A program made the position numbers and the translations under genes. 64,000 nt of DNA. It comes from Octopus sinensis. Taxonomy: Eukaryota. The notes below the pieces were generated by a model that was given only the letters and a program-made list of their open reading frames with translations, made no database searches and was not told where the DNA came from. Positions 1-47,200 of the stretch are shown here, piece after piece; within the stretch, counting starts at the first letter, position 1, and the number at the start of each line of letters is the position of its first letter. The stretch is from positions 3,472,001-3,536,000 of the forward strand of contig NC_043012.1 of the NCBI RefSeq assembly GCF_006345805.1, read 5' to 3'.

Positions 1-969
1 GGTGTGGACAGGACATTGTTCCTGGCCAGAAAAGTTGACTCCGACGTAACGAGACAGAGCGTGCAGAGAGTGGTTAGCAGTTGTGACAGGTGCCAGTCCA
101 TCGACCCTGCTCCGGTCGTGCATGAAGCGGGAAGTATTCCAGTGGACCAGGACTGGAGACGACTGGCGGTGAACATAACACACTACCGGCAGGGGACATA
201 CCTCTCAATGGTTGACTGCGGACCGGGGCGGTTCGCCATAGGGAGGGAGATGAAGTCGAGGACCGCAGAAGAAAATGTGAAAGTGTTGAATGAGATATTC
301 CTGGAACAAGGCCCCGTGGATGAACTGCTTCTGGACAACGGCACTGCATTTCGCTCGGATGTGCTGAGAGAAATGCTTGATGAGTGGAAGGTCAACCGCT
401 TCTTCAGGGCGGCATACCGGCCAAGTGGAAACGGGGTGGTGGAAAGGCATCATCGTACCATCAAGGCCATGGCAGAGAGGGGTCACATTTCACCAGTCGA
501 GGCCGTGTTTTGGTACAATATGTCGCCCAGATCAGGACAGGCTGAGGAGTCGGTGCCATACAGGGCAATATTCAGGTACGAGTGGAGGCATCTGTGTACT
601 ACATCAATGCGACCCGGGGCAGAGGAAGAGCACGCCTTCGTGCAGGTCGGGAAGGAAGTCTGGGTAAGACCCCCAAACGCATGGTGTACATCGCAATGGG
701 GAAAGGGGACAATAACCTCCGTAAATTCAAAGAATAACATCTCGGTCGATGGTATGCCACGCCACGTTTTGGACATACGGAGGATTGTCCATGCCCCAGA
801 GGATGGGGCCAGCAGCAGTGGGCAAGACGAAAACAACAGACAGGATGACGAGGTCGGCAGCAACACACCAGGAACAAGTCCTAGGGTCGCACTGCGACCA
901 CAGAGGGAGCGGCACCCTCCTCCCTGGTTGGCTGATTATGAAACCAGTTTCAGGTGCGGGAGCGAGTGA
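1..969 (+). mobile_element. Gypsy/Ty3-like LTR retrotransposon pol 3' end (integrase, open from the window edge)
   Basis: The ORF track 4..969 shows CxxC (SCDRCQ, end of the HHCC finger) and the catalytic triad VD...LDNG...VVE, with exactly 35 residues between the second D and the E. It ends with a typical RPQRERHPPPWLADY tail. There are no stops. The GTG at 4 is not a real start because the ORF continues upstream. Confidence 0.92.
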
Positions 970-2800: not shown

Positions 2801-3057
2801 ATGAGAATTTTGATGACTCACCAGGCCTGCATGACTCAAACATCACCCACAAACCACACACATAAAAAGCAACATACACACACACACATATATACAACAG
2901 GCTTCTTTCAGTTTCCTTCTACTAAATCCATTCACAAGGCTTTGGTCAGCCTGAGGCTATAGTAGAAGACACTTGCCCAAGGTGCCATGCAATGGGACTG
3001 AACACAGAACCATGTGGTTGGTAAGCAAGCTACTTACCACACAGCCACTCCTGCACC

Positions 3058-3092
<35 letters not shown>

Positions 3093-3189
3093 ATACATAT
3101 ATATGTATGTATATATATATATATATATGTATATATATGTATATATATGTTTGTATATATATATATATGTATATATATGGTATATATAT

Positions 3190-3235
<46 letters not shown>

Positions 3236-3357
3236 ACAAACACACACACATATATATATATACATATATATATATGACAGTGCCCCAGCATGGCCACAGC
3301 TCGTGAGCTGAGACTAGATAAAATAAAATAAATGAAAATAAAATAATATATATATAT

Positions 3358-3763
3358 AGGCGCAGGAGTGGGTGTGTGATAAGTAGCTTGCTTACCAACC
3401 ACACAGTTCCGGGTTCAGTCCCACTGCGTGGCACCTTGGGAAAGTGTCTTCTACTATAGCCTCGGGTCGACCAAAGCCTTGTGAGTGGATTTGGTAGACG
3501 GAAACTGAAAGAAGCCTGTCGTGTATGTATATATATATGTATGTATGTGTGTGTGTGTTTGTGTCTGTGTTTGTCCCGCCAACATCGCTTGACAACTGAT
3601 GCTGGTATATTTACGTCCCCGTTAATTAGCGGTTCGGCAAAAGAGACTGATAGAATAAGTACTAGGCTTACAAAGAATAAGTCCTGGAGTCGATTTGCTC
3701 GACTAAAAGGCGGTACTCCAGCATGGCTGCAGTCAAATGACTGGAACAAGTAAAAAAAAAGAG
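3358..3763 (+). mobile_element. tRNA-derived SINE, full length (family A)
   Basis: tRNA-like head (GGAGTGGGTGTGTGATAAG...GGGTTCAGTCCC), CCTTGGGAAAGTGTCTT central block, internal (TA/TG)n and a conserved 3' tail. Many partial copies lie at about 1470-1680, 2238-2385, 2895-3058, 9.1-9.9 kb, 16.9-17.3 kb, 21.6 kb, 23.3-24.2 kb, 25.8 kb, 32.2-32.4 kb, 45.1-45.4 kb and 58.8-59.6 kb. Confidence 0.85.
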
Positions 3764-4533
3764 TATATATACATCTATATATATATACACAGATATACAT
3801 GAATACACACACACACATATATATTTATCATCGCTGTCATTTAACATCTGCTTTCCATGCTTGCATGGGTTGGACTGTTTAACTGAGGACTTGTGAGCCA
3901 GAAGGCTGCACCAGGCTCAATCTGATCTGGCAAAGTTTCTACAGATAGATGCCCCTCCTAACGCCAACCACTCTGAGAATGTAATGGGTGCTTTTACGTG
4001 CCACCGGCACGAGGGCCAGCCAAGCAATTCTGGCAATGATCATGCTCAAAAGGAGTTTTTTACATGCTACCAGTATGGGAGCCAGTCTGGCGGCACTGGC
4101 AATGACCACGCTCGAATGTTGTTTTTCAACTGCCACCTGTACATGTGCCAGTAAGACGATGCTGGCAATGATCACACCTGAATGGTGCTTTTTACATGCC
4201 ACCGGCATTTGAGCCAATCTCTTGCCCTGGCAACGATCACACTCGGGTGTGCTTTTAACGTTCCACTGGCATGAGTGCCAACCAGGCAGTACTGTCCTCG
4301 GCCACGTCAGTGATTTTGATTTGATTTCACTTGACTCAATAGGTCTTTGCATGCAAAGTTTATTGTCCAATGAATTAGGGGTACTCATAAGTGAGCTGGT
4401 TACACCCCACGCTTGGATGTGCTTTTAATGTTCCACTGGCATGAGTTTCAATCAGGCGGTACTGTCATCAGCCACAAAAATAAATATATGTATGTATATA
4501 TATATATATATACACACAAACACACACCCATAA

Positions 4534-15539: not shown

Positions 15540-15815
15540 TTAAATGGGTGAATAGGGCATGGCATCTTGCAATGTTAGGCGAAGTAATATCTGTACACAA
15601 TAAAATTTGTCGGCAATCAACTGAAGTTTTCTACCACATGTCATCCAATAAAAACTGTCGCCCAGGAGCCGGAGAATCTGTCCACAGTGGTCATATATGT
15701 TGACATCTGGACTAGATTCTGAACTACTTCCAGAATTATCTGGGTCAACAGCCATATTCAGATCAGCAGGATTAGCCATTTGGGAAGAACACACGTAGCA
15801 ATTTTCTCCAGACAT
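15540..15815 (-). CDS. Small BH3-only-like protein with two tandem BH3 motifs (79 aa from ATG 15779, or 91 aa from ATG 15815)
   Basis: CGQILRLLGDSF and CGRKLQLIADKF both fit the BH3 pattern L-x-x-hydrophobic-G/A-D-x-hydrophobic. They follow a Ser/Asp-rich, low-complexity N-terminus. A strong minus-strand acceptor TTATCCATTTCTTTATTTTTGTAG|G opens the exon at 15876. Confidence 0.7.
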   Translation of the reverse strand: MSGENCYVCSSQMANPADLNMAVDPDNSGSSSESSPDVNIYDHCGQILRLLGDSFYWMTCGRKLQLIADKFYCVQILLRLTLQDAMPYSPI

Positions 15816-16149
15816 ATATATATATATATAACTATATATATGTATTTCTTATACAATATTAGTTCAGAAGTCAATCCTACAAAAATAAAGAAATGGATAA
15901 TACTGTAGAAAGTGAAGCTCACATTTCTTGAATGATACATTGTCAAAGTCATTTCTAACATAAATAGTTTTTCTGAAATCCTCATCAAATGTGATAACTT
16001 GAAAAATTAACTAACAAGCATTCCTGAAGCTATATCAATATAACTAATGCTATGCATACATAAAATGCTGGTCCAAAACTCAACGTAGTGTGCATGCATG
16101 ACAGAGTGTAAATGATTTAAGAGGAAAATTGGGTATAAAAAGTATCAGA

Positions 16150-27730: not shown

Positions 27731-27818
27731 GCTTTTAAAGTCGCAAGCGTTTACATTGAGTAAGCTCTTATCGTTTCCCTCAAAAAGTTTAACAGGCGCT
27801 CAGTTAATATCCCTCAAG

Positions 27819-28334
27819 ATGGTCTCTGTTCTGACGAATATCTTTTGTAGTATTAACTCCTCGCCTGTTATGGACCCCTTTCAATCGGTAATGCACATGG
27901 ATAATGAAGAAAATCTGAAATTTTGTAGAAAAGAAGTGCACAAAATTGTCAAAGACATGGTGTTAAACTTCGATAAAGGTCACTTTATCTCGAAACCCGA
28001 GTCCGACATTTGTGCAGGCATGAGAAAATCAGTATTAGAAATTTACAACACTTACAGAGATGCTCTGCATAAAAACGTTGCCCAATTGTTAGGCGAAGTT
28101 GCTGATGAATTTACAATACAAAAAGCCTATCGTTGCGTTGTGGACACCATCCTGGAGGATCGGAAAAATCTGCATTGGCGGCGTATCTCGATGGTTTTCA
28201 TTATGTTGGCCCTTTTGGCGGAAGATCAGCGAGCAAAAAAGCATGACCTTTCCTGGGAACATTATAACCAAATCTTGATAAAAATCTTTAGAGACCACAA
28301 GATCGACATCTGGATAAATGATAACGGCGGATGG
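27819..28334 (+). CDS. Bcl-2-family protein (Mcl-1/A1-like), coding exon 1: BH4-like, BH3-like, BH1 and start of BH2
   Basis: 172 codons from ATG 27819. BH1-like VVDTILEDRKNLHWRRISMVF and BH2 IDIWINDNGGW are present. The donor TGG|GTGAGG falls exactly after GGW, the conserved Bcl-2-family intron position (phase 0). Confidence 0.85.
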
Positions 28335-31300
28335 GTGAGGTTTAATTTATTATATATAATTATTTTTAAAATTCATATATTTTTTTGTACGTGAATAAAA
28401 TATAGAGATCTGATTTAGTAAACAAAATACATAGCTTTGAGAATTGTATAGGCCTTTATTTATTTTTTTTACGGAGAGAAATTCTGCTTTAAGCTCGCCA
28501 TATAATCTCTCATAACTATCTTGGTAGTATTTTACGAATTTGTATTCTTAATACAGAAAACTACACGACTGTAAAAAATTTTTGTGTCACTTTTTCGAAT
28601 TTAAAAAAGAAATCACAGTTTGAAATATAAACAAGTCCTAAATTTTGGCTTAAATCCCAACAAATTAAATGTGTTAATGGGGAAGAAAGATATCAAAAAA
28701 TCTGAATACGCCAGACTGACAAACAAACGGGGGCAGTTGTGAGATGTGCTATGAGGGGGTCATATATGGCATGCTTAAATAGAATTCTGCTCCCATGTTT
28801 TAAAAGAAAATAAACACATTTAATTTATTGAATAAAAATACTTTCCAGACACAATCATGAAAGTATAAACGAAATTGGTGTTGTTTATCTTTAAATATTA
28901 TAGTTGAAATTAAAAAGCAATTAGCAAGTCTATCTGTAAAAAAAGTGTTTTACAATAGCATTATATAATTTATTCTTTAACACTTTTTCTTACAAAACGG
29001 ACCTAATTATTTAATATATTTTAATTGACGGCATAACGTACCAAGTGCGAAAAATATTGTAGGTCTTTATTCTCATATGAAATCTCTCACTCACCCAAAC
29101 TTTTGCTTCTTTATGCTGTACCTAATATACAAACAGTTTATTATTATACAAATAGTATTGAAGTACGTTAGGGGATGATATTGCACTAATTAATGTCATT
29201 ATGGCGCCTCGCTTTATGTTCTGGAGTTCGAACCCTACTCAGTTCGATTTCGCATTCCCGACAAAATAATTGCCAATTAACAATAAACTATATATTCATT
29301 TCCACACAACCCCCCCTTTTTAAAAAAAATTTTGTTCTTGCCTCAACGTAGTCGTTCGACCTGCTTGAAATAGCAGTGAAATCTCTTAATACCCTGTTAC
29401 TTTATATGACCGTTAATTACTGTTGCCGATACCACTCGGCTGTCGACCTTGCTTGATAGTGTCTGACTATATCCATATCAAGCAATCTAAATTCTTTTAA
29501 ATAATTAACGGAAAAAAATTTTTAAATTCACAATACAAATCAAACTATAATTAGTTATCTCTCCTCTTTTTATATCGGGTGGTGGTTGTTTAGTTCCAAG
29601 TCATCCTATTAGTTCAGTCCTATGATTAGACTTTCCAGACAAAGGCCACCCCGTCATATATTTATACTATTTTTAATTTGTTGTATAGGATTTAGATGAT
29701 CCGATGCGTCTATTATGATATTTTATTTTTAAGAGAATACGACGTTAATTCCATGGAGATTTGGCTGCAATTTGTTTTCTAACCAAACCAGTTTTATTGT
29801 CGGTATATTTAATAGCACTTTAGAATTATAACCCGACAATAAAGCTGTTTCAGCCTTCCTTTTTATCTTTATTTTCCCCCCACTATATCTAGGACTACGT
29901 TACACTGGTTTGAGGGACATTTGGCTTCGGTTTTTAACAAGTCAAACGACAATATAAGCTGTTCGCTCGTCTTTATGTATAAAGTTAAAAAGTTTGGGCG
30001 AAATCATTTCCTTGATATATATTTCACCAATTTTCCCTCTCTCTCTCTCTTTGCTTATTGTTGCTAAGCACACACACTCATCATTTTCCTTGACTTCGAT
30101 ACTTTGATTATCGATTGTTGAGTATAAAAGTCAGTTCAGTCGCAGTCACACAAAGGACATTGATTATGTGTGACGTGGAGCCAACCGAGCACATCAAATG
30201 TGGGGTAGCTTTTTGCAAGGCCTTTGTTGTTGCAGCTTAGCTCCGGTTTTGAGCATCGATCGTGCAAACTTACGATCAAAGCCGCTCCAGCTGTGAATAT
30301 CTATCTTAATCTATCCAAGATCATATTACCAAACTTATTCTCTTTTTTTTTAAGAGGCTGAGAGGTGTACTGAGTGAGATTTTGCTGCTATTTCTAGCGG
30401 ATCATTGCTGCCACGTAGAAGTTCTCCCACTTTCTCATTAGTTCGTGGGATGGGCGGATTCGTTATCAAATTAAAACCAGACTTGCAGCCTACCAAACCG
30501 GATTTAGTCTCCAATTTTATTCTGGGTTGCAAAAAGAGAGTAAAATTACTCTACAATCCAAATTCTCTTAATTGCCGTTATTACTTTTCTTTACATTTCG
30601 ACCGACCTAATTTATCGAATTATTTATTTAAAACCAAGCATAAATAGCAAAGGAGTTGTGTTCGCTGATTTTTTTTTCCTTCCTTGTCTCAGTTTTAAAC
30701 ACTCATTTTCGACGATAGTAAATTAAGTAAAATTCTATTTCTAAGTATAGGTCGATGGTTAGTACTTGTCACTTGGAATTTTCAGTATTTCAGAGTAAAG
30801 ACCACTTCTGGAAATTTACGGAGGAGAGGTGTTGATTGCTCTGTAAATTTTCCAAAAGAAGCCATCTAAACCTTATTTCTCATAACTTTCATTGTTTTAG
30901 CTTTAAAACACACACTCACACGAGGCAATACTTAACGAAAACTATACTACTCTCTAGATAAATATATAAATATTTTATCCATAAATCCGACAATAAATAT
31001 TGTTTCGCCCATGTATATATATAAACACACACACACACACTGTAACTAACACAAGAGTAGAAATTCATATTTGTGAATTTTCGTTTCCTTTCTTAGCTCT
31101 TAGCATTTTTACATCCTGTTTTGAGTAGATCTAGATCTAATTACATCTGTCACTTAGTATTTCAAACATTTTTTAAAATTGCTACAATTTCGCCTTGAAA
31201 TCTTGCCGAATTGACTTTATTTTTGAAACGGAAATTGTCGGTTACCAAGAGAACCTAAAATTTAATCATTACTCTGAGCATTTAATGGTCGGCGATCTTT

Positions 31301-32932
31301 CGTAGACCTTTCGTTCTCTTTCGCTCTCATTACTTCAAAAGTTCCCGTCATTACTTCAAAAGTTCCCGCAAGCCCATATGTAAAAAAAAAAAAAAATTTT
31401 TACGGAAATCGACGGAAAGGTCTACTTGAGACGAAAGATTGCCTAATGGTCTAATGCTGGAATTTAAGCCAAAAATTTAAACTAATTTTTTAAAATTTTA
31501 TAAAATTTCGAAAACTTAAACAGATTTCATAGTCGTATGAATTATCGTGTGTAGAACAGAAATTCACCAGAAATTTCTGAAAATTAAAATAATAATAAAG
31601 TTATGAAGAGGTTTTATATGTCGTGTATAAAGCAGAATTGCCTTCTTGTCGATGGTGGTGGCGATGTATCTGCCAGCAGTCACGTATTCTCTTGAGTGTG
31701 TTAACGTCATACTTTCCGACCTCTCCTAATTCTTAGCCGAAATGAATAGTCTGTTAACATTTGCGAATTTTTGCATCATCGTATTACTAGAGGCTTGGTC
31801 CGAAACGTTTGCATTCTCATCTACCCACGCACGGCGTATCAGTTTATCTTCTTGCGCAGCAGACGAATCGCGTCTCTCTTCAGGTTGGCTGACATATATT
31901 CATTCGTTACTTGGGCCAAACTACGCAAAAAAACAAACCAGCAAGGGCGTCTCTGTGGTTGCCCGACCTGCTAGACTCAACAGCCAAATACCTTACCGTC
32001 TAACAAAGAAAAGACACGGTACATAATCGAGAAGACATAGCGCTCAAGATAATATACGAAATGGCCATATGTGGAACGTTTTTCACTGTAGTGTATAATA
32101 GATCCTAAAGCCACTATTTTCCTGTGCTCTGAAAATGTCTCATTCCAGATGTTTTACCTTCTGTTGCAGTCATTAGGCTGCAGCTATGTTAGGGAACCGC
32201 CTTGAAGGGTTTAGTTGAACAAATCGATCCCAGTAAATTTTCTTTTCTAAACCTGGTACTTAACCATGGTTCTTTTTTCACTACTAAGTTGTGAGGAACA
32301 TAAACAAACTAACACCAGTTACCAAGTGGTAGCAGTGGTCTCACGCGTGTGCACGACAAGCCTTCAATTTCCGTCTACCAAATCCACTCAAAAGGTTTCG
32401 GTTGGCCAAGTGCTATAGCATACTTGTCAAAAGCCGTCACACAATGCGACTAAAACCAGAGCTTAAACTATTTCTTTTTTTAAATTCAGAAAATCACTAG
32501 TCACACATAGCTGAAACAGGACATTTTCAGACTTGAAAATAACCAGTCTGTCCTTTGCACAGACTAGGATTTGCATTCATATGTGCATACACTTGAGAGC
32601 ACTTAAAAGTGCAAAAAATGCATTTTTCTGAAAGTTTCAACTGTGACCATTCTATTTAAAAAGTGTTACAAATATTATCTCTTCATCGTTGTTTTTTCTT
32701 AGTATAAATCCACCTTATTTTTGGACCTTGTTAAAAAATTTTCTACAACAGCTTCGTTTTTAAAAATTTTCATTAGATTATTTTCAAAATGTTTACTTCT
32801 TTTGTAGTTTTGCTTGCTGATGATGTGTGTATAGATCTATACTGCTATTGCCCCATGTTGTTCTATTCCTTGTCAGTACAGAAATTTTGTTGTTAAATTC
32901 CCTCTGTTACTATCTGGTTTTTAAATTTAGTA

Positions 32933-33146
32933 CCTATTTATTACCCACAAGGGGCTAAACAAGGACAGACATAGGTATTAAGTAGATTACATCGACCCCA
33001 GTGCGTAACTGGTACTTAATTTATCGACCCCGAAAGGATGAAAGGCAAAGTCGACCTCGACGGAATTTGAACTCACAACGTAACGCAGACGAAATACCGC
33101 TAAGCATTTCGCCCGGCATGCTAACGTTTCTGCCAGCTCGCCGCCT
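32933..33146 (-). mobile_element. SINE family B copy in the Bcl-2-like intron
   Basis: Near-identical to the 11143-11371 copy. Confidence 0.8.
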
Positions 33147-33190
33147 TTTAAATTTAATACCACTGTGCAGCTCATTGGACAAATGTCTTC

Positions 33191-33650
33191 TACAGGGTGC
33201 GAGGGGTATTTGAGGACATTTTGTTTTTAGTTCATTTTAGTATTTAATGTAGCTTTTTTTTTTTTTTTTTGATAAACCTTTCAATTTATCATGCTAACTC
33301 AAGAAATGAATATACATGCAAACCACAGTGTTGCAAGATCATTTGTACATAAATTTTGGTTGGAATTGGAGGCATGTGATGATAATGTTTCATTCTGTAT
33401 CAAAGAGAAAAAAATATTCACAACGCTCAAACACTAAAAGGACACCAGAATTTATACAACATTCAAAACATTATTGATGAAAACCCCAGATCAATGAGGT
33501 CCATTGGTAAAGAATTTGGGGTATCAGAGTGGACTATCAGAACTGTGGTACATTGTAACATTTTGATACAAGTCCTTTGTAATGAGAAAAGGCCAATTGT
33601 ATGAAACGATGTCCGTTCTTTGGAATGCTGCCAATAAAGATCATTATTAA
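33191..33650 (+). mobile_element. Tc1/mariner-superfamily transposon 5' remnant
   Basis: Starts TACAGGGTG. Carries a frameshifted HTH-like ...RTPEFI...IIDENPRSMRSIGKEFGVSEWTIRTVVH. A related 5' fragment lies at about 24505-24700. Confidence 0.6.
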
Positions 33651-33662
33651 CTCCAACAATTC

Positions 33663-33941
33663 TCAGTAATCATTTCGTTGTTGTTTCTGCATACAAAGGT
33701 GGTATTCAAGAATGGTAGAGCAGACATCATCAGTCACTTCATTGCTACTAGTTATGTAAATCTTGAGTTTCGTCCAAGTTTCTCTAAATCTTTTGAAAAA
33801 TGCCATGTCTGGACCAGAAGTTGCTCCCATCAGTGAGTCAAAACAGCTCCTAAAAACTAACTCAAAATTGTGATGATGGCAAGGGAAGTACAACAGGTTG
33901 CGATTGAACAACTTTTCTAGATTTGTACTGGCATCATTCAC
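33663..33941 (-). pseudogene. DDE DNA-transposase fragment with a CxxH-type motif
   Basis: ORF track: LLYFPCHHHNFELVF...SGPDMAFFKRFRETW resembles invertebrate DDE transposases. The superfamily is not assignable by eye. Confidence 0.5.
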
Positions 33942-35006
33942 TTGACCTGTGTTGCTTGCTGTCGTATCTGAGCAAAGTGCCTGAATTTTGTCAGTTATAC
34001 CTCATTTCTTCACTGCTTGGTAAACAGCCATGGCTTGCTGTTCTCTTGAAGATGTTAGAATTTCAGGGACTCCCAACAATTGCTCCTTGCCATGGAAAGT
34101 TTGACCCTCTGGAAAATTGGAAGAAGTCTTCGATGTTTCGAGCAAGCCTATACACCTCTATAGAAATTTCAGATATTAACAATTAAAGGAACAATTAAAC
34201 GTTTGTTAGGAATTGATATATTATTGCTTAGCCCCAGGGCAACCCTGACAGTACAGACCTATGGTCAAAGGCTTCCATTTATGACCAACCATCCTTTGAG
34301 GGCTGTCTCTGACTACATTATCTAATGTTCTTTAAATAAAAAAAGAATGATGTGATTTAAGGGATATTTGGTTACTATTTCTAGCAAAATAGCAGCTTTC
34401 AAAAGATTCACTCTTTGAAGTGACTGGAACAATTTTATGTATTTAAAATATATTCATAAAATGTGGCTGCAAGATACAAAGCTTTCACTTTTCTTTTTTC
34501 TCAATTCTTGCTTGGCTAATTTTGCATTCTTGTTAGCTTTAGTGGTTGTCAGGGAGAATTTCCTGCTTTTGTGGGGTATCATTCACAGAACACACTATTG
34601 TCATGCAGTGTCCCTAAAATAAAAGTGAAAAACTGCTGACTGCCTTAACCTTTGAACATTTAAACAGGCCATATCAAGCCAAAATATTCTACCAGTTTTA
34701 TATCTATATCAGCCAGATCTAGCCTCTCACACCTGCCCTACAATGTCATTCTAAAAATAGTCACGTTGAAATCTCAAAGCTATGAGGTAAGGTTTGCTTA
34801 ATTCAAAACATTGTGAACAGATAAGTATTATATTTGGCAGAGTAATCTGAATGTTAAAGGTTTATGTTACCCATCTCAACCTTAAGCTTCTTTTGTGTGG
34901 AAAAGATAGATATACCTTTCTTAAGAGCACTCTAGTTTCCAAAATTGCATATTTTTCTATTTTTTGTATTCTATTTTCTTATATGTTTTTATTTTCCTTA
35001 ATGCAG

Positions 35007-35111
35007 GATGGCTTCCTGGAACATATTCATATGAAACACAAAAGTAAATTGGAAGAAATTATCTGGCTGAGTACAATTGGACTCTGGTCTTTGTCAGTTT
35101 CTGGTTTGTGA
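35007..35111 (+). CDS. Bcl-2-family protein, coding exon 2: end of BH2 and hydrophobic C-terminal tail
   Basis: Acceptor TTTTATTTTCCTTAATGCAG|GAT. In phase 0 it reads DGFLEHIHMKHKSKLEEIIWLSTIGLWSLSVSGL*, giving GGW|DGFLEH, like Mcl-1 GWDGFVEF. The spliced protein would be 206 aa. A candidate AATAAA lies at 37141. Confidence 0.82.
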   Translation, partial: DGFLEHIHMKHKSKLEEIIWLSTIGLWSLSVSGL

Positions 35112-42400: not shown

Positions 42401-43237
42401 TACTGATTTTCGGATTAATCAATATAAAATTTGGTTAATACTAGTTTTGTGAAGGAATAAAATTTCTTATAATTCTATACATCTACATGCAGCTCGCCTA
42501 CATTTTTTTCTTTACATATAGATTTTATGAAGTGATGAAGTTACATCGACTCCTTAAAATGCAAATATGTAAATATCAAAGAAAAGTTGAAAACATTCGT
42601 ACTTACACATCCATATTAACAAGCCATGGGTTATAAAGAAGTTTATTTGAGGAGAGAAAAGCTTATATGTAATTATGAAATAGTCTTCATTTTCAGAAGA
42701 ATGTTTTAAAAAATAAATGAATCCCCACTCACCTGCGATATGATTTGATGATGTGTTCTGCTGGAGATTGAGATTAAATCTTGAAAGATCGAAGCAGGAA
42801 TGCAGGAGCAGATAACTAATGAACCACTGAAAGCCTTTGTTAAAACATACCCCCTCCCTCCCTCTCTCGCATTCCATATTTCACACGTCAGTAGTTGTCG
42901 AGCTCACTATAAATTTGAATACAGGGGTTAGATATATTTATAGTAGAAATATTTTCTGATTTTAATTAAAACGATGTCAGGCCCAACAACAGCTCGCACG
43001 CGAGATTACAAGCGTTTCTGGCACTCGCGTTCCCTTCACAAATTTACACTTGCTAATAACCTGGTTCGATTGACCGAAATAACGTAGGTCTAAAAAGAAA
43101 GTAGGCATAACTCCTTTCTTTTGATTTAACCGTAATCAATTAACAGAAATTTGGAGCTTTCATAAATTATTTACTTCATGTTTGATAAACTATTTACCGC
43201 ATATTCTACAACATATTTTATAAATTGATTGTATCAA

Positions 43238-44206
<969 letters not shown>

Positions 44207-47200
44207 ATAAGAAAAATTTTAACCGAAATACTGCCCAACCTACACAGATTAATGTATTTGGATGTTCAATTACATTTTTCTATGAACAATCTTGAACTCG
44301 CATTTAAAATTCCCTTTCAGATACGACAGAAAGAAATACCAAATCCTCTTTAGACGGCGACAATAAAGGTAAGATTATAGCTCTTACATTTCGCGAATGA
44401 ATAATATTGTACCATGATTTTTTTTCTATATCAACATTAAATTGACAAGATGTAGTTCATATTTAATTGCCTCTTCATACAAATTATTCTGAAGTGATGA
44501 CAAAATTCACTCAAATGTCTAAGCATCAAAGAAAAGTTGTCTTGCGTTGATCAAAACATTTACACTCATACAACAATACTACACAAACATTTGTATAGGG
44601 AATCATAAGAAAATGAAACAATCTTGTTAATTGAAAAAAAAAATATACAAAAATGAAAAATAAGTTATATGTAATTATATATTGGTCTACAATTTCAGAG
44701 GAACGCTTTAAAAACACGAATAAATCTTCACTTACCTGCAATACGATATGAAGTTCTCTCTCGGAAATTCAGAATGTTTAGAGAGAGAGTCAAAGAGACA
44801 GGAATGTAAGAGCAGATAACTCATCAACTACTACGGGCTTTTATTAATCTATAATACATACTTTGTATTGTTGTTTCCACACCTTAGATGGTAATAATAG
44901 ATCAATACTTCGTAATTGATCTGAACAGAAATAGCTTATATTTATAACAATTTTATGACACAAACACAAACATATCACACAGCCAACATGCCGCCTTCTT
45001 AAACGACAATTTTAGTCCTTAACAGAGTCACAGTAACTAGGAACCGGTCGGGCGTTAATAGTTTATTGAGGTGTCGTTTCCAAACGCATTTTTTTTACAC
45101 GGTGCGATTATTATTATTATTAAATGAACAAATCGACCCTAGAACTTTTTTTAAAGTTTGGTACTTATTCTATCGGTCTCTTCCTGAACTGCTTAATTAC
45201 GGTGACGTAAACAAGCAAAGACTAGCCGTCAGGCGAAACATACACACACACACACACACACGTATGACGGTTTTCTTTCATTTGCAGTTTACTAAATTCA
45301 CACACAAAGATTTGGTCGGCCCGGAGGCATAGTATAAGAAACTTGCCCAAAGTACCTTACAAGGGAACTGAACCCGAAACCATGTGGTTGGGAAACAAAT
45401 TTCTTAGCTCATAATAATGACTGCACATTTAGTTAATTAACTCTAGAATAGCTAGATCTTTTTTTTTTTTTGAACATTATTGAATTGATAAAATATTGTC
45501 ATTCGATACGAGATATCGACATATTTGGCGAGGACTAGTTATTAGAAACAGCGTATAAATGGTTATAATTCAATATATATGTAGTAGTATACCTACTTTG
45601 CCGACAGATTACATGAACGGACGAAGTTAAATTGATTCATTGAAATCTACAGAGAAAAAAAATCACCTCCAGTTGATCAGAACATGTGCATTCACAGCCA
45701 CATAAAGAATATCCATAGGTTGTATAGAAAAGTATTTAAGAAAAAGAAATGATTCTGTTCGGTAAAAATAACTATCATAAAATTAGAGAATAGGTTACAA
45801 GTAATTATAAATCATTTTTCAATTTCAGAGGAATTTAAATTAAAAATTTAAAAAACAAAAATCACGAGTTTCCACTCACCCACGACACAGTTTGATGTTC
45901 TCGGAGATTTAGAATAAATGTTTCCAGATCGACTCAGGAATGTAAGAGCAGATAACTCGTCAATTACTAAAGGCTATTGTTTACGTTCATTCCATACACT
46001 TGGTGATTAATCAATACCTCACAATAATCGATTTGAATATGAAGTAACTTTTATTTATAGCAGATTCTTCTGACTTTCATTAAAATGATATCAAGCCTAA
46101 CGTACCGCCCACTTTAATGACACCTCCTTGATGGGAAGTTCCTTTTATGTAAGGCGGGAACAGAATCTGTCGACCAGTCACTTTCTACTGTTATTTTATT
46201 TACAGGGTTTATTTATTTAATTAACTTTCGCCGTTAGTAAAGCAGATAATTACTTTGCACCATATTGTATACAAAGTATAGACAGTGGGTAGTACCCAGA
46301 AAACAAGGGAATTTTCCCAGCAGAAGTACTACAACAGTAACACTGCAAATGAATTTAGTAAGAGAGCGAAATTAAAAGTGTATGGACAAAAAGGAAAGAA
46401 ATTTTCACACATTTACGACTCCCTACTGAAACTCAAATTAATAATGTTTATATTTATATCAACAATTCACCGAAAAACGACATTGTAACTCAGTTTGAAA
46501 TGTTTAAATATTTTGTTTATTTATATTTTTACATATATTAATAGAAACCAAGCTTTGAAAAATTATTTACATCAAAGTCTCCACCTAAGTTTATAAATTA
46601 CCTCTACTCAAGAATGGGGTATTAGAATCGAAAAACTAACGCAATCACCCGAATGATTTACTAAGATGTTCGATATGAATTTCCGATGAACAACGTTGAA
46701 AACAAAATCTATCATTTAAAATTCCCTTTCCGAGATATCTAAGAGACAATGGGTACTGAGCACTCTTGAGACTGAAGACATCGATAAATAATTAGTGGCA
46801 ATTAAGATCTGTCATTCCACATATGTATCATATACATAGTTAATCAATTCTAGAACATCTATTTATTATTATTATTATTATTTTTATCAAAATACTGTAA
46901 ATCGATATTTGGTCAAAATTGTCTTTTGACTTAGTTAATATTGGTTCTTTTGAAAGCGAGAAAATCAGCTACAGTTTCTTAAATTTATGTACAGTACGCA
47001 TATTTTCTAATACAGATTTTATGACACCAAATTTATTCCTTGAAATCCAAATATGTAAAATAGTAGAGAAAAGTTATCTGGAGTTGAAGAAAACGTGTAA
47101 AGTCACAGACCCACATAAACAAGGGATGGGTTGTACATAAATTTATCTAAGAGAAAGGAGAGATCCTCTTCGGTGAAAATACTTAATTATAAGTTACACT

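What the first reader, a model, noticed from the sequence alone, without database searches (positions are those of the whole stretch)
15540..15876. Tiny protein with two tandem BH3 motifs (Noxa-like architecture) in an invertebrate
Seen: CGQILRLLGDSF and CGRKLQLIADKF, 16 residues apart and looking like an internal duplication, in a 79-91-aa ORF with no other Bcl-2 domains. Established: BH3-only proteins are short, poorly conserved and often missed by annotation. Human NOXA BH3 reads CATQLRRFGDKL and rodent Noxa has two BH3 motifs. Few are documented in molluscs. Inference: a lineage-specific dual-BH3 pro-apoptotic protein.
Basis: partly seen in the sequence, partly recalled or inferred. Interest (0 to 1): 0.8.

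Follow-up and report, generated by a model that had tools for sequence, protein, structure and literature searches.

The report
Octopus microprotein with two BH3 motifs
A real, selection-constrained 91-residue octopus protein carries two adjacent copies of the short helix motif that cell-death "BH3-only" proteins use to switch off Bcl-2 survival proteins. That makes it a credible candidate for the BH3-only trigger reported missing from molluscs, but binding and killing are untested.

Summary
A 91-aa ORF on the minus strand (15540-15815) reads CGQILRLLGDSF and CGRKLQLIADKF, 16 residues apart. The window is Octopus sinensis.

It is a real gene:
- The protein is identical in O. vulgaris and 95% identical in O. 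bimaculoides.
- It has ~45%-identical relatives in three other unnamed lineages.
- One of those lineages yields a spliced mRNA contig.
- dN/dS is 0.10-0.14 overall and 0.03 over the double motif.

Both motifs keep every BH3 signature position in all five sequences. The 12-residue pattern occurs three times in the six-frame window, twice here and once in a Bcl-2-family gene 12 kb away. AlphaFold predicts a disordered N-terminal half followed by two amphipathic helices, at low confidence.

It matches no Pfam family or PDB chain, and it is not a Noxa homologue. Motif 2 is closest to the BMF BH3, which I recalled from memory.

Best reading, at about 0.5: a lineage-restricted BH3-only-type ligand of Bcl-2 proteins with an internally duplicated BH3.

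Main rival: a conserved helical microprotein with some other partner.

Expression in Octopus itself was not shown. A 2022 paper figure lists an O. bimaculoides BH3-only candidate that I could not inspect.

The parts
15540..15876 (-). Predicted single coding exon of the microprotein gene, from the acceptor AG at 15878-15877 through the stop codon
   Evidence: A polypyrimidine tract plus AG sits immediately upstream. The homologous exon in lineage C starts at a proven acceptor 78 nt before the conserved ATG, shown by spliced contig L019 against unspliced L013 with a GTAAG...TTAG intron. The octopus acceptor itself is inferred, not shown.
15540..15815 (-). ORF of 91 aa plus stop; a 79-aa form starts at Met13
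   Evidence: The O. vulgaris copy has 0/276 nucleotide differences. O. bimaculoides A0A0L8HHP9 is 95% identical. dN/dS among relatives is 0.10-0.14.
15780..15815 (-). Conserved N-terminal dodecamer M-[SA]-[GA]-E-x-C-x-V-C-S-[SA]-Q (residues 1-12); function unknown
   Evidence: Alignment A2. pN is 0.07-0.17 against saturated synonymous sites between octopus and the other lineages, and B-C omega is 0.13. This argues that Met1, not Met13, is the ancestral start.
15687..15779 (-). Acidic, Ser-rich linker (residues 13-43), variable and predicted disordered
   Evidence: Residues 1-39 have no helix or strand in the AF2 model and hold all the sub-50 pLDDT segments. Residues 1-39 contain 6 D/E, 0 K/R and 19 S/T/P/N/G. 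Linker omega is about 1 between octopus and the other lineages.
15648..15686 (-). BH3-like motif A, CGQILRLLGDSFY (residues 44-56): h1 C44, h2 L48, h3 L51, G52-D53, h4 F55
   Evidence: Pattern hit. C44, G45, L48, L51, D53 and F55 are invariant in five sequences. The hydrophobic moment peaks at 0.54. AF2 predicts a helix over residues 40-61.
15600..15638 (-). BH3-like motif B, CGRKLQLIADKFY (residues 60-72): h1 C60, h2 L64, h3 I67, A68-D69, h4 F71
   Evidence: Pattern hit. It is the best BLOSUM match to any of 12 recalled BH3 cores in the whole six-frame window: score 40 against BMF, versus a maximum of 34 in 30 shuffled windows. G61, L64, A68, D69 and F71 are invariant. AF2 predicts a helix over residues 63-85.
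15543..15599 (-). C-terminal tail CVQILLRLTLQDAMPYSPI (residues 73-91): Leu-rich continuation of helix 2, then a short end; too polar for a transmembrane anchor
   Evidence: It stays in frame and is conserved as protein in the other lineages (Y-C-[VL]-Q-[IL]-[LF]-[LV]-x-[LI]-T). Tail omega is 0.03-0.09 among lineages A-C. DNA similarity between lineages stops within a few bases of the stop codon.
27819..35111 (+). Neighbouring, divergently oriented Bcl-2-family gene (O. sinensis LOC115220385, 206 aa). It is a candidate partner by position only
   Evidence: Pfam Bcl-2 scores 35.7 bits against a cut-off of 31.4. There is a weak match to Bcl-xL chains. P0011 is 99% identical, and its gene range maps to these window coordinates.

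Best explanation
The locus encodes a small protein found so far only in a narrow group of sequences (Octopus plus three unnamed lineages, probably other coleoid cephalopods). It is built like a BH3-only cell-death initiator.

Shown:
- It is a real coding gene.
- It consists of a conserved N-terminal dodecamer, a variable acidic/Ser-rich segment, and two tandem 16-residue units.
- Each unit carries a complete BH3 signature.

Predicted at low confidence: the acidic/Ser-rich segment is disordered, and the two units lie on amphipathic helices.

Inferred:
- After induction or release from some restraint, one or other helix inserts its four hydrophobic residues (C44/L48/L51/F55 or C60/L64/I67/F71) into the groove of a Bcl-2-family protein.
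- The invariant Asp (D53 or D69) pairs with the conserved BH1 arginine.
- This neutralises a survival protein, possibly the divergent Bcl-2-like gene 12 kb away, and frees Bak/Bax-type effectors.
- The duplicated BH3 would widen or strengthen the range of targets, as proposed for rodent Noxa.
For: The gene is real.
- The ORF is intact in O. sinensis, O. vulgaris and O. bimaculoides and in three more distant lineages.
- DNA similarity between lineages is confined to the ORF.
- dN/dS for B-C is 0.098 overall and 0.029 in the double-motif block. For A-B it is 0.14.
- Spliced mRNA contig L019 carries a canonical GT-AG intron.
- The ORF was recovered from 15 and 12 independent sequencing-run assemblies for lineages A and C.

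The BH3 character is consistent.
- Both motifs satisfy the 12-position signature. That signature is otherwise found only in the neighbouring Bcl-2 gene in the window, and never as a pair in 300 shuffles.
- Leu-h2, Asp, the small residue before Asp, h3 and Phe-h4 are kept in all 10 motif instances. The solvent-side x positions vary.
- Motif B is the top BH3-like 13-mer in the window.
- The protein is short, has no other domain, and is predicted disordered apart from two amphipathic helices.

The context is suggestive.
- A Bcl-2-family gene lies 12 kb away, head to head.
- With roughly ten such genes in a genome of about 2.7 Gb (both figures my assumption), chance proximity is of the order of 1e-4.
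Against: - No binding or killing data exist, and no complex model could be made.
- BH3-like patterns are notorious for false positives. PMC7022251 states that biochemical verification is needed.
- Conservation is broader than the BH3 positions: FYWMT, R62, FYCxQ and an N-terminal CxVC are also invariant. The helices are unusually hydrophobic.
- Taken alone, motif A scores within the chance range against known BH3 cores (26, against 26-34 in shuffles).
- The AF2 model is low confidence (pLDDT 55, pTM 0.24).
- No transcript contig carrying the ORF was found for Octopus itself.
- No Bcl-2-like gene lies within +/-10 kb of the lineage-B copy. The neighbour has only octopod relatives at the sensitivity used, so the adjacency may be recent.
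Confidence: 0.5

Rival explanations
1. It is a conserved helical microprotein with a function unrelated to Bcl-2 proteins. Examples would be a membrane- or organelle-associated amphipathic hairpin, or a small Cys-containing regulator that binds another partner. On this view the BH3-like pattern is a by-product of a Leu/Phe-rich amphipathic repeat.
For: - The whole 29-residue block is nearly invariant, not only the BH3 positions. An N-terminal CxVC motif that no BH3-only family I know of has is also conserved.
- The helices are very hydrophobic, and the two could pack on each other as a hairpin.
- No model or structure database links the protein to any BH3-only family.
- The BH3 motif is short and degenerate (PMC7022251).
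Against: - Two independent copies both keep Leu, small residue-Asp and Phe at BH3 spacing across lineages whose synonymous sites are saturated.
- The pattern is rare in the window and absent as a pair from shuffles.
- Motif B matches the BMF BH3 core at 8 of 13 positions (BMF sequence from memory).
- The proximity to a Bcl-2-family gene would be an unexplained coincidence.
Confidence: 0.38
2. It is a true, highly diverged orthologue of a vertebrate BH3-only gene (Bmf/Bim-type or Noxa), rather than an independently evolved family.
For: - Motif B against human BMF BH3 gives 8/13 identities, the top score in the window.
- Cys at h1 and Lys after Asp match Noxa.
- Local alignments to BMF and NOXA have shuffle p of about 0.006-0.008 for the octopus sequence.
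- PMC8998228 reports that BLAST with human Bim/Bad/Bmf finds potential BH3-only proteins in lophotrochozoans, including O. bimaculoides.
Against: - Similarity is confined to the 13-15-residue core. It fades in the other lineages: 4-5/13 to BMF, with alignment p of 0.05-0.18 for lineage B.
- No Pfam BH3-only family matches any of the five members at E<=10.
- An exhaustive phmmer search of 1.84 billion representatives found no relative outside the family.
- There is no dynein-light-chain motif of the Bim/Bmf type, judged by inspection.
Confidence: 0.07
3. It is not a functional gene: a chance ORF, a decaying fragment of a multi-motif Bcl-2 gene, or an upstream ORF of another gene.
For: - The O. 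sinensis record appears to have no gene call for it.
- There is no octopus transcript contig in the collection.
- It is tiny and sits among repeats.
Against: - The frame is intact in six sequence sources, with dN/dS of 0.03-0.14.
- Conservation stops within a few bases of the stop codon.
- The mRNA is spliced.
- In the roughly 1-kb lineage-A contigs it is the only ORF called, and about 750 nt of non-coding sequence follow it.
- It is annotated as protein in O. vulgaris and O. bimaculoides.
Confidence: 0.03

Closest known systems
Rodent Noxa (PMAIP1), 103 aa with two BH3 regions; human NOXA, 54 aa
   Same: - It is a very small protein with no domain other than BH3.
- It has two BH3 motifs in one chain. 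PMC4905168 states that mouse Noxa is the only known BH3-only protein with two.
- Cys at the first hydrophobic position and Lys after the Asp match human NOXA (my recollection of its sequence).
- A Leu-rich stretch follows the last BH3.
   Different: - There is no sequence kinship. No Pfam family matches, so the PMAIP1 model does not, and alignment covers only the motif core.
[quoted passage not shown] Here a 16-residue unit is repeated back to back in one exon, and the duplication is shared by all lineages found.
- The N-terminal CxVC dodecamer has no counterpart in Noxa.
Bmf and Bim (vertebrate intrinsically disordered BH3-only proteins)
   Same: - Motif B (GRKLQLIADKF) matches the human BMF BH3 core (ARKLQCIADQF, from memory) at 8/13 positions.
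- Motif A is nearest to BIM, at 6/13.
- The predicted architecture, disordered except at the BH3 helix, is the same (PMC8998228 on disorder).
   Different: - There is no match to any Pfam family, and nothing outside the core aligns.
- There is no K-x-T-Q-T dynein-light-chain motif, judged by inspection.
- The protein is much shorter and has two BH3s.
- Similarity to BMF drops to 5/13 or less in lineages A-C.
Invertebrate BH3-only proteins: C. elegans EGL-1, schistosome BH3-only proteins, Hydra candidates, and the 'potential' lophotrochozoan candidates of PMC8998228 Fig. 5 (which lists O. bimaculoides)
   Same: They are short, lineage-restricted and recognisable only by the BH3 core. All are proposed to antagonise a Bcl-2 survival protein by BH3-in-groove binding (PMC7022251, PMC8998228).
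   Different: - Those described in the text have a single BH3.
- None is detectably related to this family.
- I could not see the figure. The 'Ob' entry may be this very protein's orthologue or a different one, and the held supplement text does not say.

Membership tests
BH3-only proteins (functional class defined by a lone BH3 short linear motif) | BH3 signature: h1-small-x-x-Leu(h2)-x-x-h3-small-Asp-x-h4 | tested here: met
   It is present twice (residues 44-55 and 60-71). All signature positions are kept in 10/10 motif instances across five sequences. It is rare by chance.
BH3-only proteins (functional class defined by a lone BH3 short linear motif) | No BH1, BH2 or BH4 motif and no Bcl-2 fold | tested here: met
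   No Pfam family matches at E<=10 for any of the five members. No PDB sequence or profile match was found. The protein is only 91 aa.
BH3-only proteins (functional class defined by a lone BH3 short linear motif) | The motif lies on an amphipathic helix in an otherwise disordered, short protein | tested here: met
   AF2 predicts no secondary structure over residues 1-39 and helices at 40-61 and 63-85, but at low confidence (pLDDT 55). Hydrophobic-moment peaks of 0.54 and 0.42 sit on the two motifs. This is a prediction only.
BH3-only proteins (functional class defined by a lone BH3 short linear motif) | Binds the hydrophobic groove of a Bcl-2-family protein through the BH3 | not testable with these tools
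The neighbour's own model is unusable.
BH3-only proteins (functional class defined by a lone BH3 short linear motif) | Induces or sensitises to Bax/Bak-dependent cell death, abolished by BH3 mutations | not testable with these tools
   This needs experiments.
BH3-only proteins (functional class defined by a lone BH3 short linear motif) | Strict PROSITE-style BH3 pattern (recalled from memory: [LIVAT]-x3-L-[KARQ]-x-[IVAL]-G-D-[DESG]-[LIMFV]-[DENSHQ]...) | tested here: inconclusive
   By inspection, motif A fits from Leu to Phe but has Cys at the first position and Tyr after Phe. Motif B has Ala-Asp-Lys. As far as I recall, several accepted BH3-only proteins (Noxa, Bmf, Bad) also fail this pattern, so it is not decisive.
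Noxa / PMAIP1 | Sequence match to the family model | tested here: not met
   No Pfam family matches any family member at E<=10, so the PMAIP1 model (which I believe Pfam holds) does not. The local alignment to recalled NOXA covers only the BH3 core, at p of about 0.008-0.05.
Noxa / PMAIP1 | [quoted passage not shown] | tested here: not met
   Here two 16-residue units abut within one exon. The Noxa mechanism is described in PMC4905168.
Bmf / Bim | Match to the family models, and a dynein-light-chain-binding motif upstream of the BH3 | tested here: not met
   No Pfam family matches. No K-x-T-Q-T-type motif is visible by inspection. Only BH3-core similarity was found.
Multi-motif Bcl-2 family (Pfam PF00452) | Bcl-2 domain with BH1/BH2 | tested here: not met
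   The microprotein gives no hit. The neighbouring gene at 27819-35111 does, at 35.7 bits.

The most novel reading that the evidence does not exclude
This is the first BH3-only family of molluscs, filling the gap that oyster studies describe as 'no BH3-only homolog in the entire Mollusca phylum'. It would also be a natively bivalent one. Two BH3 helices sit 16 residues apart, and on one continuous helix their binding faces would point about 160 degrees apart. A single 91-residue protein could then engage two Bcl-2-family molecules at once, or hide both faces in a self-packed hairpin until activated.
Probability: 0.3. Interest if true: 0.8.

Novelty: new variant of a known kind. Interest (0 to 1): 0.62.

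Why it matters
Papers on molluscan apoptosis state that no BH3-only protein has been identified in the phylum (PMC5550854, 2017; PMC8917759, 2022). They treat this as either a real simplification of the pathway or a detection failure. This gene is a concrete, testable candidate with a defined set of point mutants and an obvious first partner next door.

If it binds Bcl-2 proteins, three things follow:
- Cephalopods have the three-part Bcl-2 system of survival proteins, effectors and BH3-only triggers.
- BH3-only proteins arise repeatedly as lineage-specific microproteins.
- There is a second, independent case of a double BH3 besides rodent Noxa.

If it does not bind, it is still a conserved microprotein missing from the O. 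sinensis gene set. It would also be a cautionary example of a convincing BH3 look-alike.

Tried and rejected
- **Family and structure searches.** Pfam, PDB-sequence and PDB-profile searches of the protein and of the five-member family found nothing.
- **False positives.** Three long bacterial repeat proteins in the exhaustive search (P0004, P0005, P0007) match only the low-complexity Ser/Thr-rich part. I discarded them.
- **In-silico docking.** I submitted a fusion of the Bcl-2-like core, a Gly-Ser linker and the BH3 region.
- **AF2 of the neighbouring Bcl-2-like protein.** With only three close sequences it gave pLDDT 38.7. I therefore ran no fold search on either model.
- **Synteny.** No Bcl-2-like sequence lies within +/-10 kb of the lineage-B copy or on the lineage-C contigs. 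The neighbour's homologues are all close octopod ones, so synteny outside Octopus could not be tested.
- **A third degenerate 16-residue repeat in the tail.** Not supported (p of 0.17-0.66).
- **Splice donor after '...ADKFY'.** I first suspected one. I rejected it because the tail stays in frame and is conserved as protein in all lineages.
- **Window origin.** I first attributed the window to O. vulgaris. I corrected this to O. sinensis when L022 proved 100% identical.
- **Naming lineages A-C.** Literature searches for the run accessions, the UniProt id, the locus name and the motif strings found nothing.
- **Structured RNAs.** tRNA and Rfam scans of the window were empty.
Full report
**1. What is in the sequence**

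The minus strand of the window has an ATG-to-TAA ORF at 15540-15815. It encodes 91 residues: MSGENCYVCSSQMANPADLNMAVDPDNSGSSSESSPDVNIYDHCGQILRLLGDSFYWMTCGRKLQLIADKFYCVQILLRLTLQDAMPYSPI.
- A second in-frame Met at residue 13 gives the 79-aa alternative.
- Immediately upstream, at 15878-15877, a polypyrimidine tract ends in AG.

**2. Where the window comes from**

An exact-product look-up first pointed to Octopus vulgaris chromosome OX597828.1. The O. sinensis locus fetched for the neighbouring gene (CM016874.1) is 100% identical to window 17819-45111 over 27,293 bases. The O. vulgaris locus is only 96-98% identical in the flanks. The window is therefore O. sinensis, apparently CM016874.1:3472001-3536000. 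The ORF itself has 0 differences in 276 nt between the two species, against about 1% mismatches in 1.5 kb on either side. That is too few sites to be significant on its own.

**3. Is the pair of motifs more than chance?**

I wrote the BH3 core as a 12-position pattern: hydrophobic or Cys, small, x, x, Leu, x, x, hydrophobic, small, Asp, x, hydrophobic.
- It occurs three times in the roughly 128,000 six-frame positions of the window. Two hits are in this ORF and one is in the Bcl-2-family ORF at 27.8 kb.
- Dinucleotide-preserving shuffles give 0.4 hits per window. No in-frame pair within 30 residues appeared in 300 shuffles.
Motif B (CGRKLQLIADKFY) is the best in the window, with score 40 against BMF and 8/13 identical. 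The maximum in 30 shuffled windows was 34.
- Motif A scores 26 against BIM, which is within the chance range.
- The two 16-residue units resemble each other far more than shuffled versions do (p<5e-5) in each of five family members. A third in-register repeat in the tail is not supported.

**4. Is it a gene?**

*Relatives.*
- A word-indexed search found O. bimaculoides A0A0L8HHP9: 91 aa, 95% identical, all five differences within residues 8-26.
- The cluster also holds the 91-aa and 79-aa products annotated on the O. vulgaris chromosome.
- The exhaustive phmmer search of 1.84 billion representatives added one true relative, P0006. It also returned three bacterial repeat proteins that match only the Ser-rich low-complexity part.
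- A profile search added P0009 and P0010.
- I call the three new sources lineages A (P0006), B (P0009) and C (P0010). Their taxa are not given by the tools, and literature searches for the accessions found nothing. Their divergence suggests other coleoid cephalopods, but that is inference.

*True start codon.* The caller's N-terminal extension in lineage A comes from a bacterial TTG start. The first ATG after an in-frame TAA gives MSGETCNVCSSQ..., which is collinear with the octopus Met1.

*Transcription and splicing.*
- In lineage C the 1,260-nt contig L019 aligns to the 5.4-kb contig L013 in two blocks. L019 1-843 matches L013 1567-2410, and L019 842-1259 matches L013 5047-5464.
- The 2.6-kb gap is bounded by AAG|GTAAGG and TTAG|CAGG. 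L019 is therefore a spliced mRNA with a 5'-UTR exon of at least 843 nt and a single coding exon.
- Lineage B has the same acceptor context.
- The ORF was recovered from 15 independent run assemblies for lineage A, as contigs of about 1 kb in which it is the only ORF called. It was recovered from 12 for lineage C.

*Selection.* DNA similarity between lineages begins near the conserved ATG (A-B) or about 160 nt upstream of it (B-C). It ends within a few bases of the stop codon.

| Comparison | Region | Result |
|---|---|---|
| B-C | whole ORF | dS 0.45, dN 0.044, omega 0.098 |
| B-C | double-motif block (29 codons) | omega 0.029 |
| B-C | tail | omega 0.044 |
| B-C | N-terminal dodecamer | omega 0.13 |
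| A-B | whole ORF | omega 0.14 |
| A-C | whole ORF | omega 0.13 |
| Octopus vs A, B, C | double-motif block | synonymous sites saturated; pN 0.15-0.19 |
| Octopus vs A, B, C | N-terminal dodecamer | pN 0.07-0.17 |
| Octopus vs A, B, C | linker | pN 0.60-0.70 (unconstrained) |

This refutes a chance ORF. It shows the tail is coding, so there is no splice after ADKFY. It also favours Met1, the 91-aa form, as the ancestral start. In Octopus, Met13 has the better Kozak context (A at -3, G at +4, against T at -3 for Met1), so both forms may be made.

*Caveat.* No transcript contig with the ORF was on record for any Octopus species. Expression in Octopus therefore rests on other groups' annotations. 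Transcriptionally silent-until-induced behaviour is typical of BH3-only genes, but that is an excuse, not evidence.

**5. Anatomy of the protein**

Alignment A2 gives four parts:
- a conserved dodecamer, M-[SA]-[GA]-E-x-C-x-V-C-S-[SA]-Q;
- a variable acidic, Ser/Thr-rich linker of 31-50 residues;
- the block C-G-Q-[IL]-L-[RQ]-[LV]-L-[GA]-D-[SR]-F-Y-W-M-T-[CY]-G-R-[KN]-L-x-[LF]-[IL]-A-D-[KR]-F-Y;
- a tail, [CY]-[VL]-Q-[IL]-[LF]-[LV]-x-[LI]-T..., that ends differently in Octopus.

In all ten motif instances the BH3-defining positions are kept: small residue, Leu-h2, h3, Gly/Ala-Asp and Phe-h4. The positions that face solvent in a groove-bound BH3 are the ones that vary.

AlphaFold2 on the five-sequence alignment predicts no structure for residues 1-39 and two helices, 40-61 and 63-85. 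Confidence is low (mean pLDDT 55, pTM 0.24). Hydrophobic-moment peaks of 0.54 and 0.42 coincide with the two motifs. On one continuous helix the two BH3 faces would be about 160 degrees apart.

**6. Context**

The ORF at 27756-28394 (+) matches Pfam Bcl-2 at 35.7 bits against a cut-off of 31.4. It matches Bcl-xL chains weakly.
- It is O. sinensis LOC115220385 (P0011, 206 aa). Its CDS range maps to window 27819-35111, with the intron at the usual place after GGW and a hydrophobic C-terminus.
- It is divergent. BH1 reads HWRR, and the canonical BH3 position lacks Gly-Asp.
- Only close octopod relatives were found.
- The two genes are head to head, 12 kb apart. Nothing that looks like a gene lies between them: the three ORFs of at least 110 aa there look repetitive or low-complexity and were not scanned.
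- With of the order of ten Bcl-2-family genes in a genome of about 2.7 Gb (both figures my assumption), chance proximity this close is roughly 1e-4.
- The adjacency could not be tested outside Octopus.

**7. How it most likely works**

Shown: a real, constrained, spliced microprotein gene with two complete BH3 signatures and no other recognisable domain, next to a Bcl-2-family gene. Predicted at low confidence: the signatures lie on amphipathic helices and the N-terminal half is disordered.

Inferred: it acts as a BH3-only-type ligand. One helix at a time docks in the groove of a survival-type Bcl-2 protein. C44/L48/L51/F55 or C60/L64/I67/F71 fill the four pockets, and D53 or D69 pairs with the BH1 arginine. 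This relieves inhibition of Bak/Bax-type effectors. The duplication could broaden target range. Because the footprints of two motifs 16 residues apart overlap, it could instead provide alternative registers or a self-masked hairpin.

I put this at about 0.5. The main rival (0.38) is a conserved helical microprotein with another partner. The evidence for that rival is that conservation extends well beyond the BH3 positions (FYWMT, R62, FYCxQ, N-terminal CxVC) and that the helices are unusually hydrophobic.

**8. Comparison with what is known**

- No Pfam family, including those for vertebrate BH3-only proteins, matches any member at E<=10. No PDB sequence or profile match was found.
Shuffle p is 0.006-0.08 for Octopus and 0.05-0.18 for lineage B.
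- The protein therefore works like a BH3-only protein on paper but is not a member of the Noxa, Bmf or Bim families.
- The Noxa analogy (tiny, two BH3s) is apt only as architecture. [quoted passage not shown]

Literature:
- PMC8917759 (2022) repeats that BH3-only members have yet to be identified in molluscs.
- PMC9389742 lists only Bnip3 for the bobtail squid.
- PMC8998228 (2022) says BLAST with human Bim/Bad/Bmf finds 'potential' BH3-only proteins in Lophotrochozoa, and its Figure 5 legend lists O. bimaculoides. The figure is not held and the supplement text is silent. Given the BMF-like motif B, that entry could be this protein's orthologue. If so, the candidate has been noticed before, although the text says nothing of a double BH3.
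- No paper in the library contains the UniProt id, the locus name or either motif string.

**9. Verdict**

Kinship to Noxa does not hold, and function is untested.

I rate it a new variant of a known kind: a BH3-only-type microprotein with an internally duplicated BH3 and a conserved CxVC N-terminus. Interest is 0.62. It addresses a stated gap in molluscan apoptosis and is directly testable. It is tempered by the well-known unreliability of BH3 motif calls and by possible prior notice.

Noticed in passing
window 27819-35111 (+): This is a divergent Bcl-2-family gene (O. sinensis LOC115220385, 206 aa). BH1 reads HWRR instead of NWGR, the canonical BH3 position lacks Gly-Asp, and there is a hydrophobic C-terminus. 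Only close octopod relatives were found. The AF2 model was unusable (pLDDT 38.7).
   Followed up: partly
window 28077-28112 (+): The Bcl-2-like protein's segment VAQLLGEVADEF fits the same 12-residue BH3 pattern. It shares 6/13 residues with motif A of lineage A. In the alignment to Bcl-xL, however, it sits at helix alpha3, not at the BH3 helix. The similarity is probably coincidental, but a shared origin is not excluded.
   Followed up: partly
window 15540-15815 (-): There is an annotation gap. The exact 91-aa product is on record only for the O. vulgaris chromosome, although this O. sinensis window encodes it identically. It is annotated in O. vulgaris (91-aa and 79-aa forms) and in O. bimaculoides.
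   Followed up: partly
window 15780-15815 (-): The conserved N-terminal motif M-[SA]-[GA]-E-x-C-x-V-C-S-[SA]-Q is under purifying selection, and I know of no counterpart in BH3-only proteins. The CxxC could be a metal, redox or acylation site.
   Followed up: no
window 4-969 (+): A retroelement integrase fragment is present. Pfam rve scores 28.6 bits, below the gathering cut-off, and there is a weak Integrase_Zn match.
   Followed up: no
window 43218-44353 and 2973-3818: Long (TA)n/(TATG)-type microsatellites generate spurious 'YIYIYI' ORFs of up to 333 aa on both strands.
   Followed up: no
L012 5975-6820: A reverse-transcriptase (RVT_1) ORF lies 3 kb upstream of the lineage-B copy. No Bcl-2-like sequence lies within +/-10 kb there.
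   Followed up: partly
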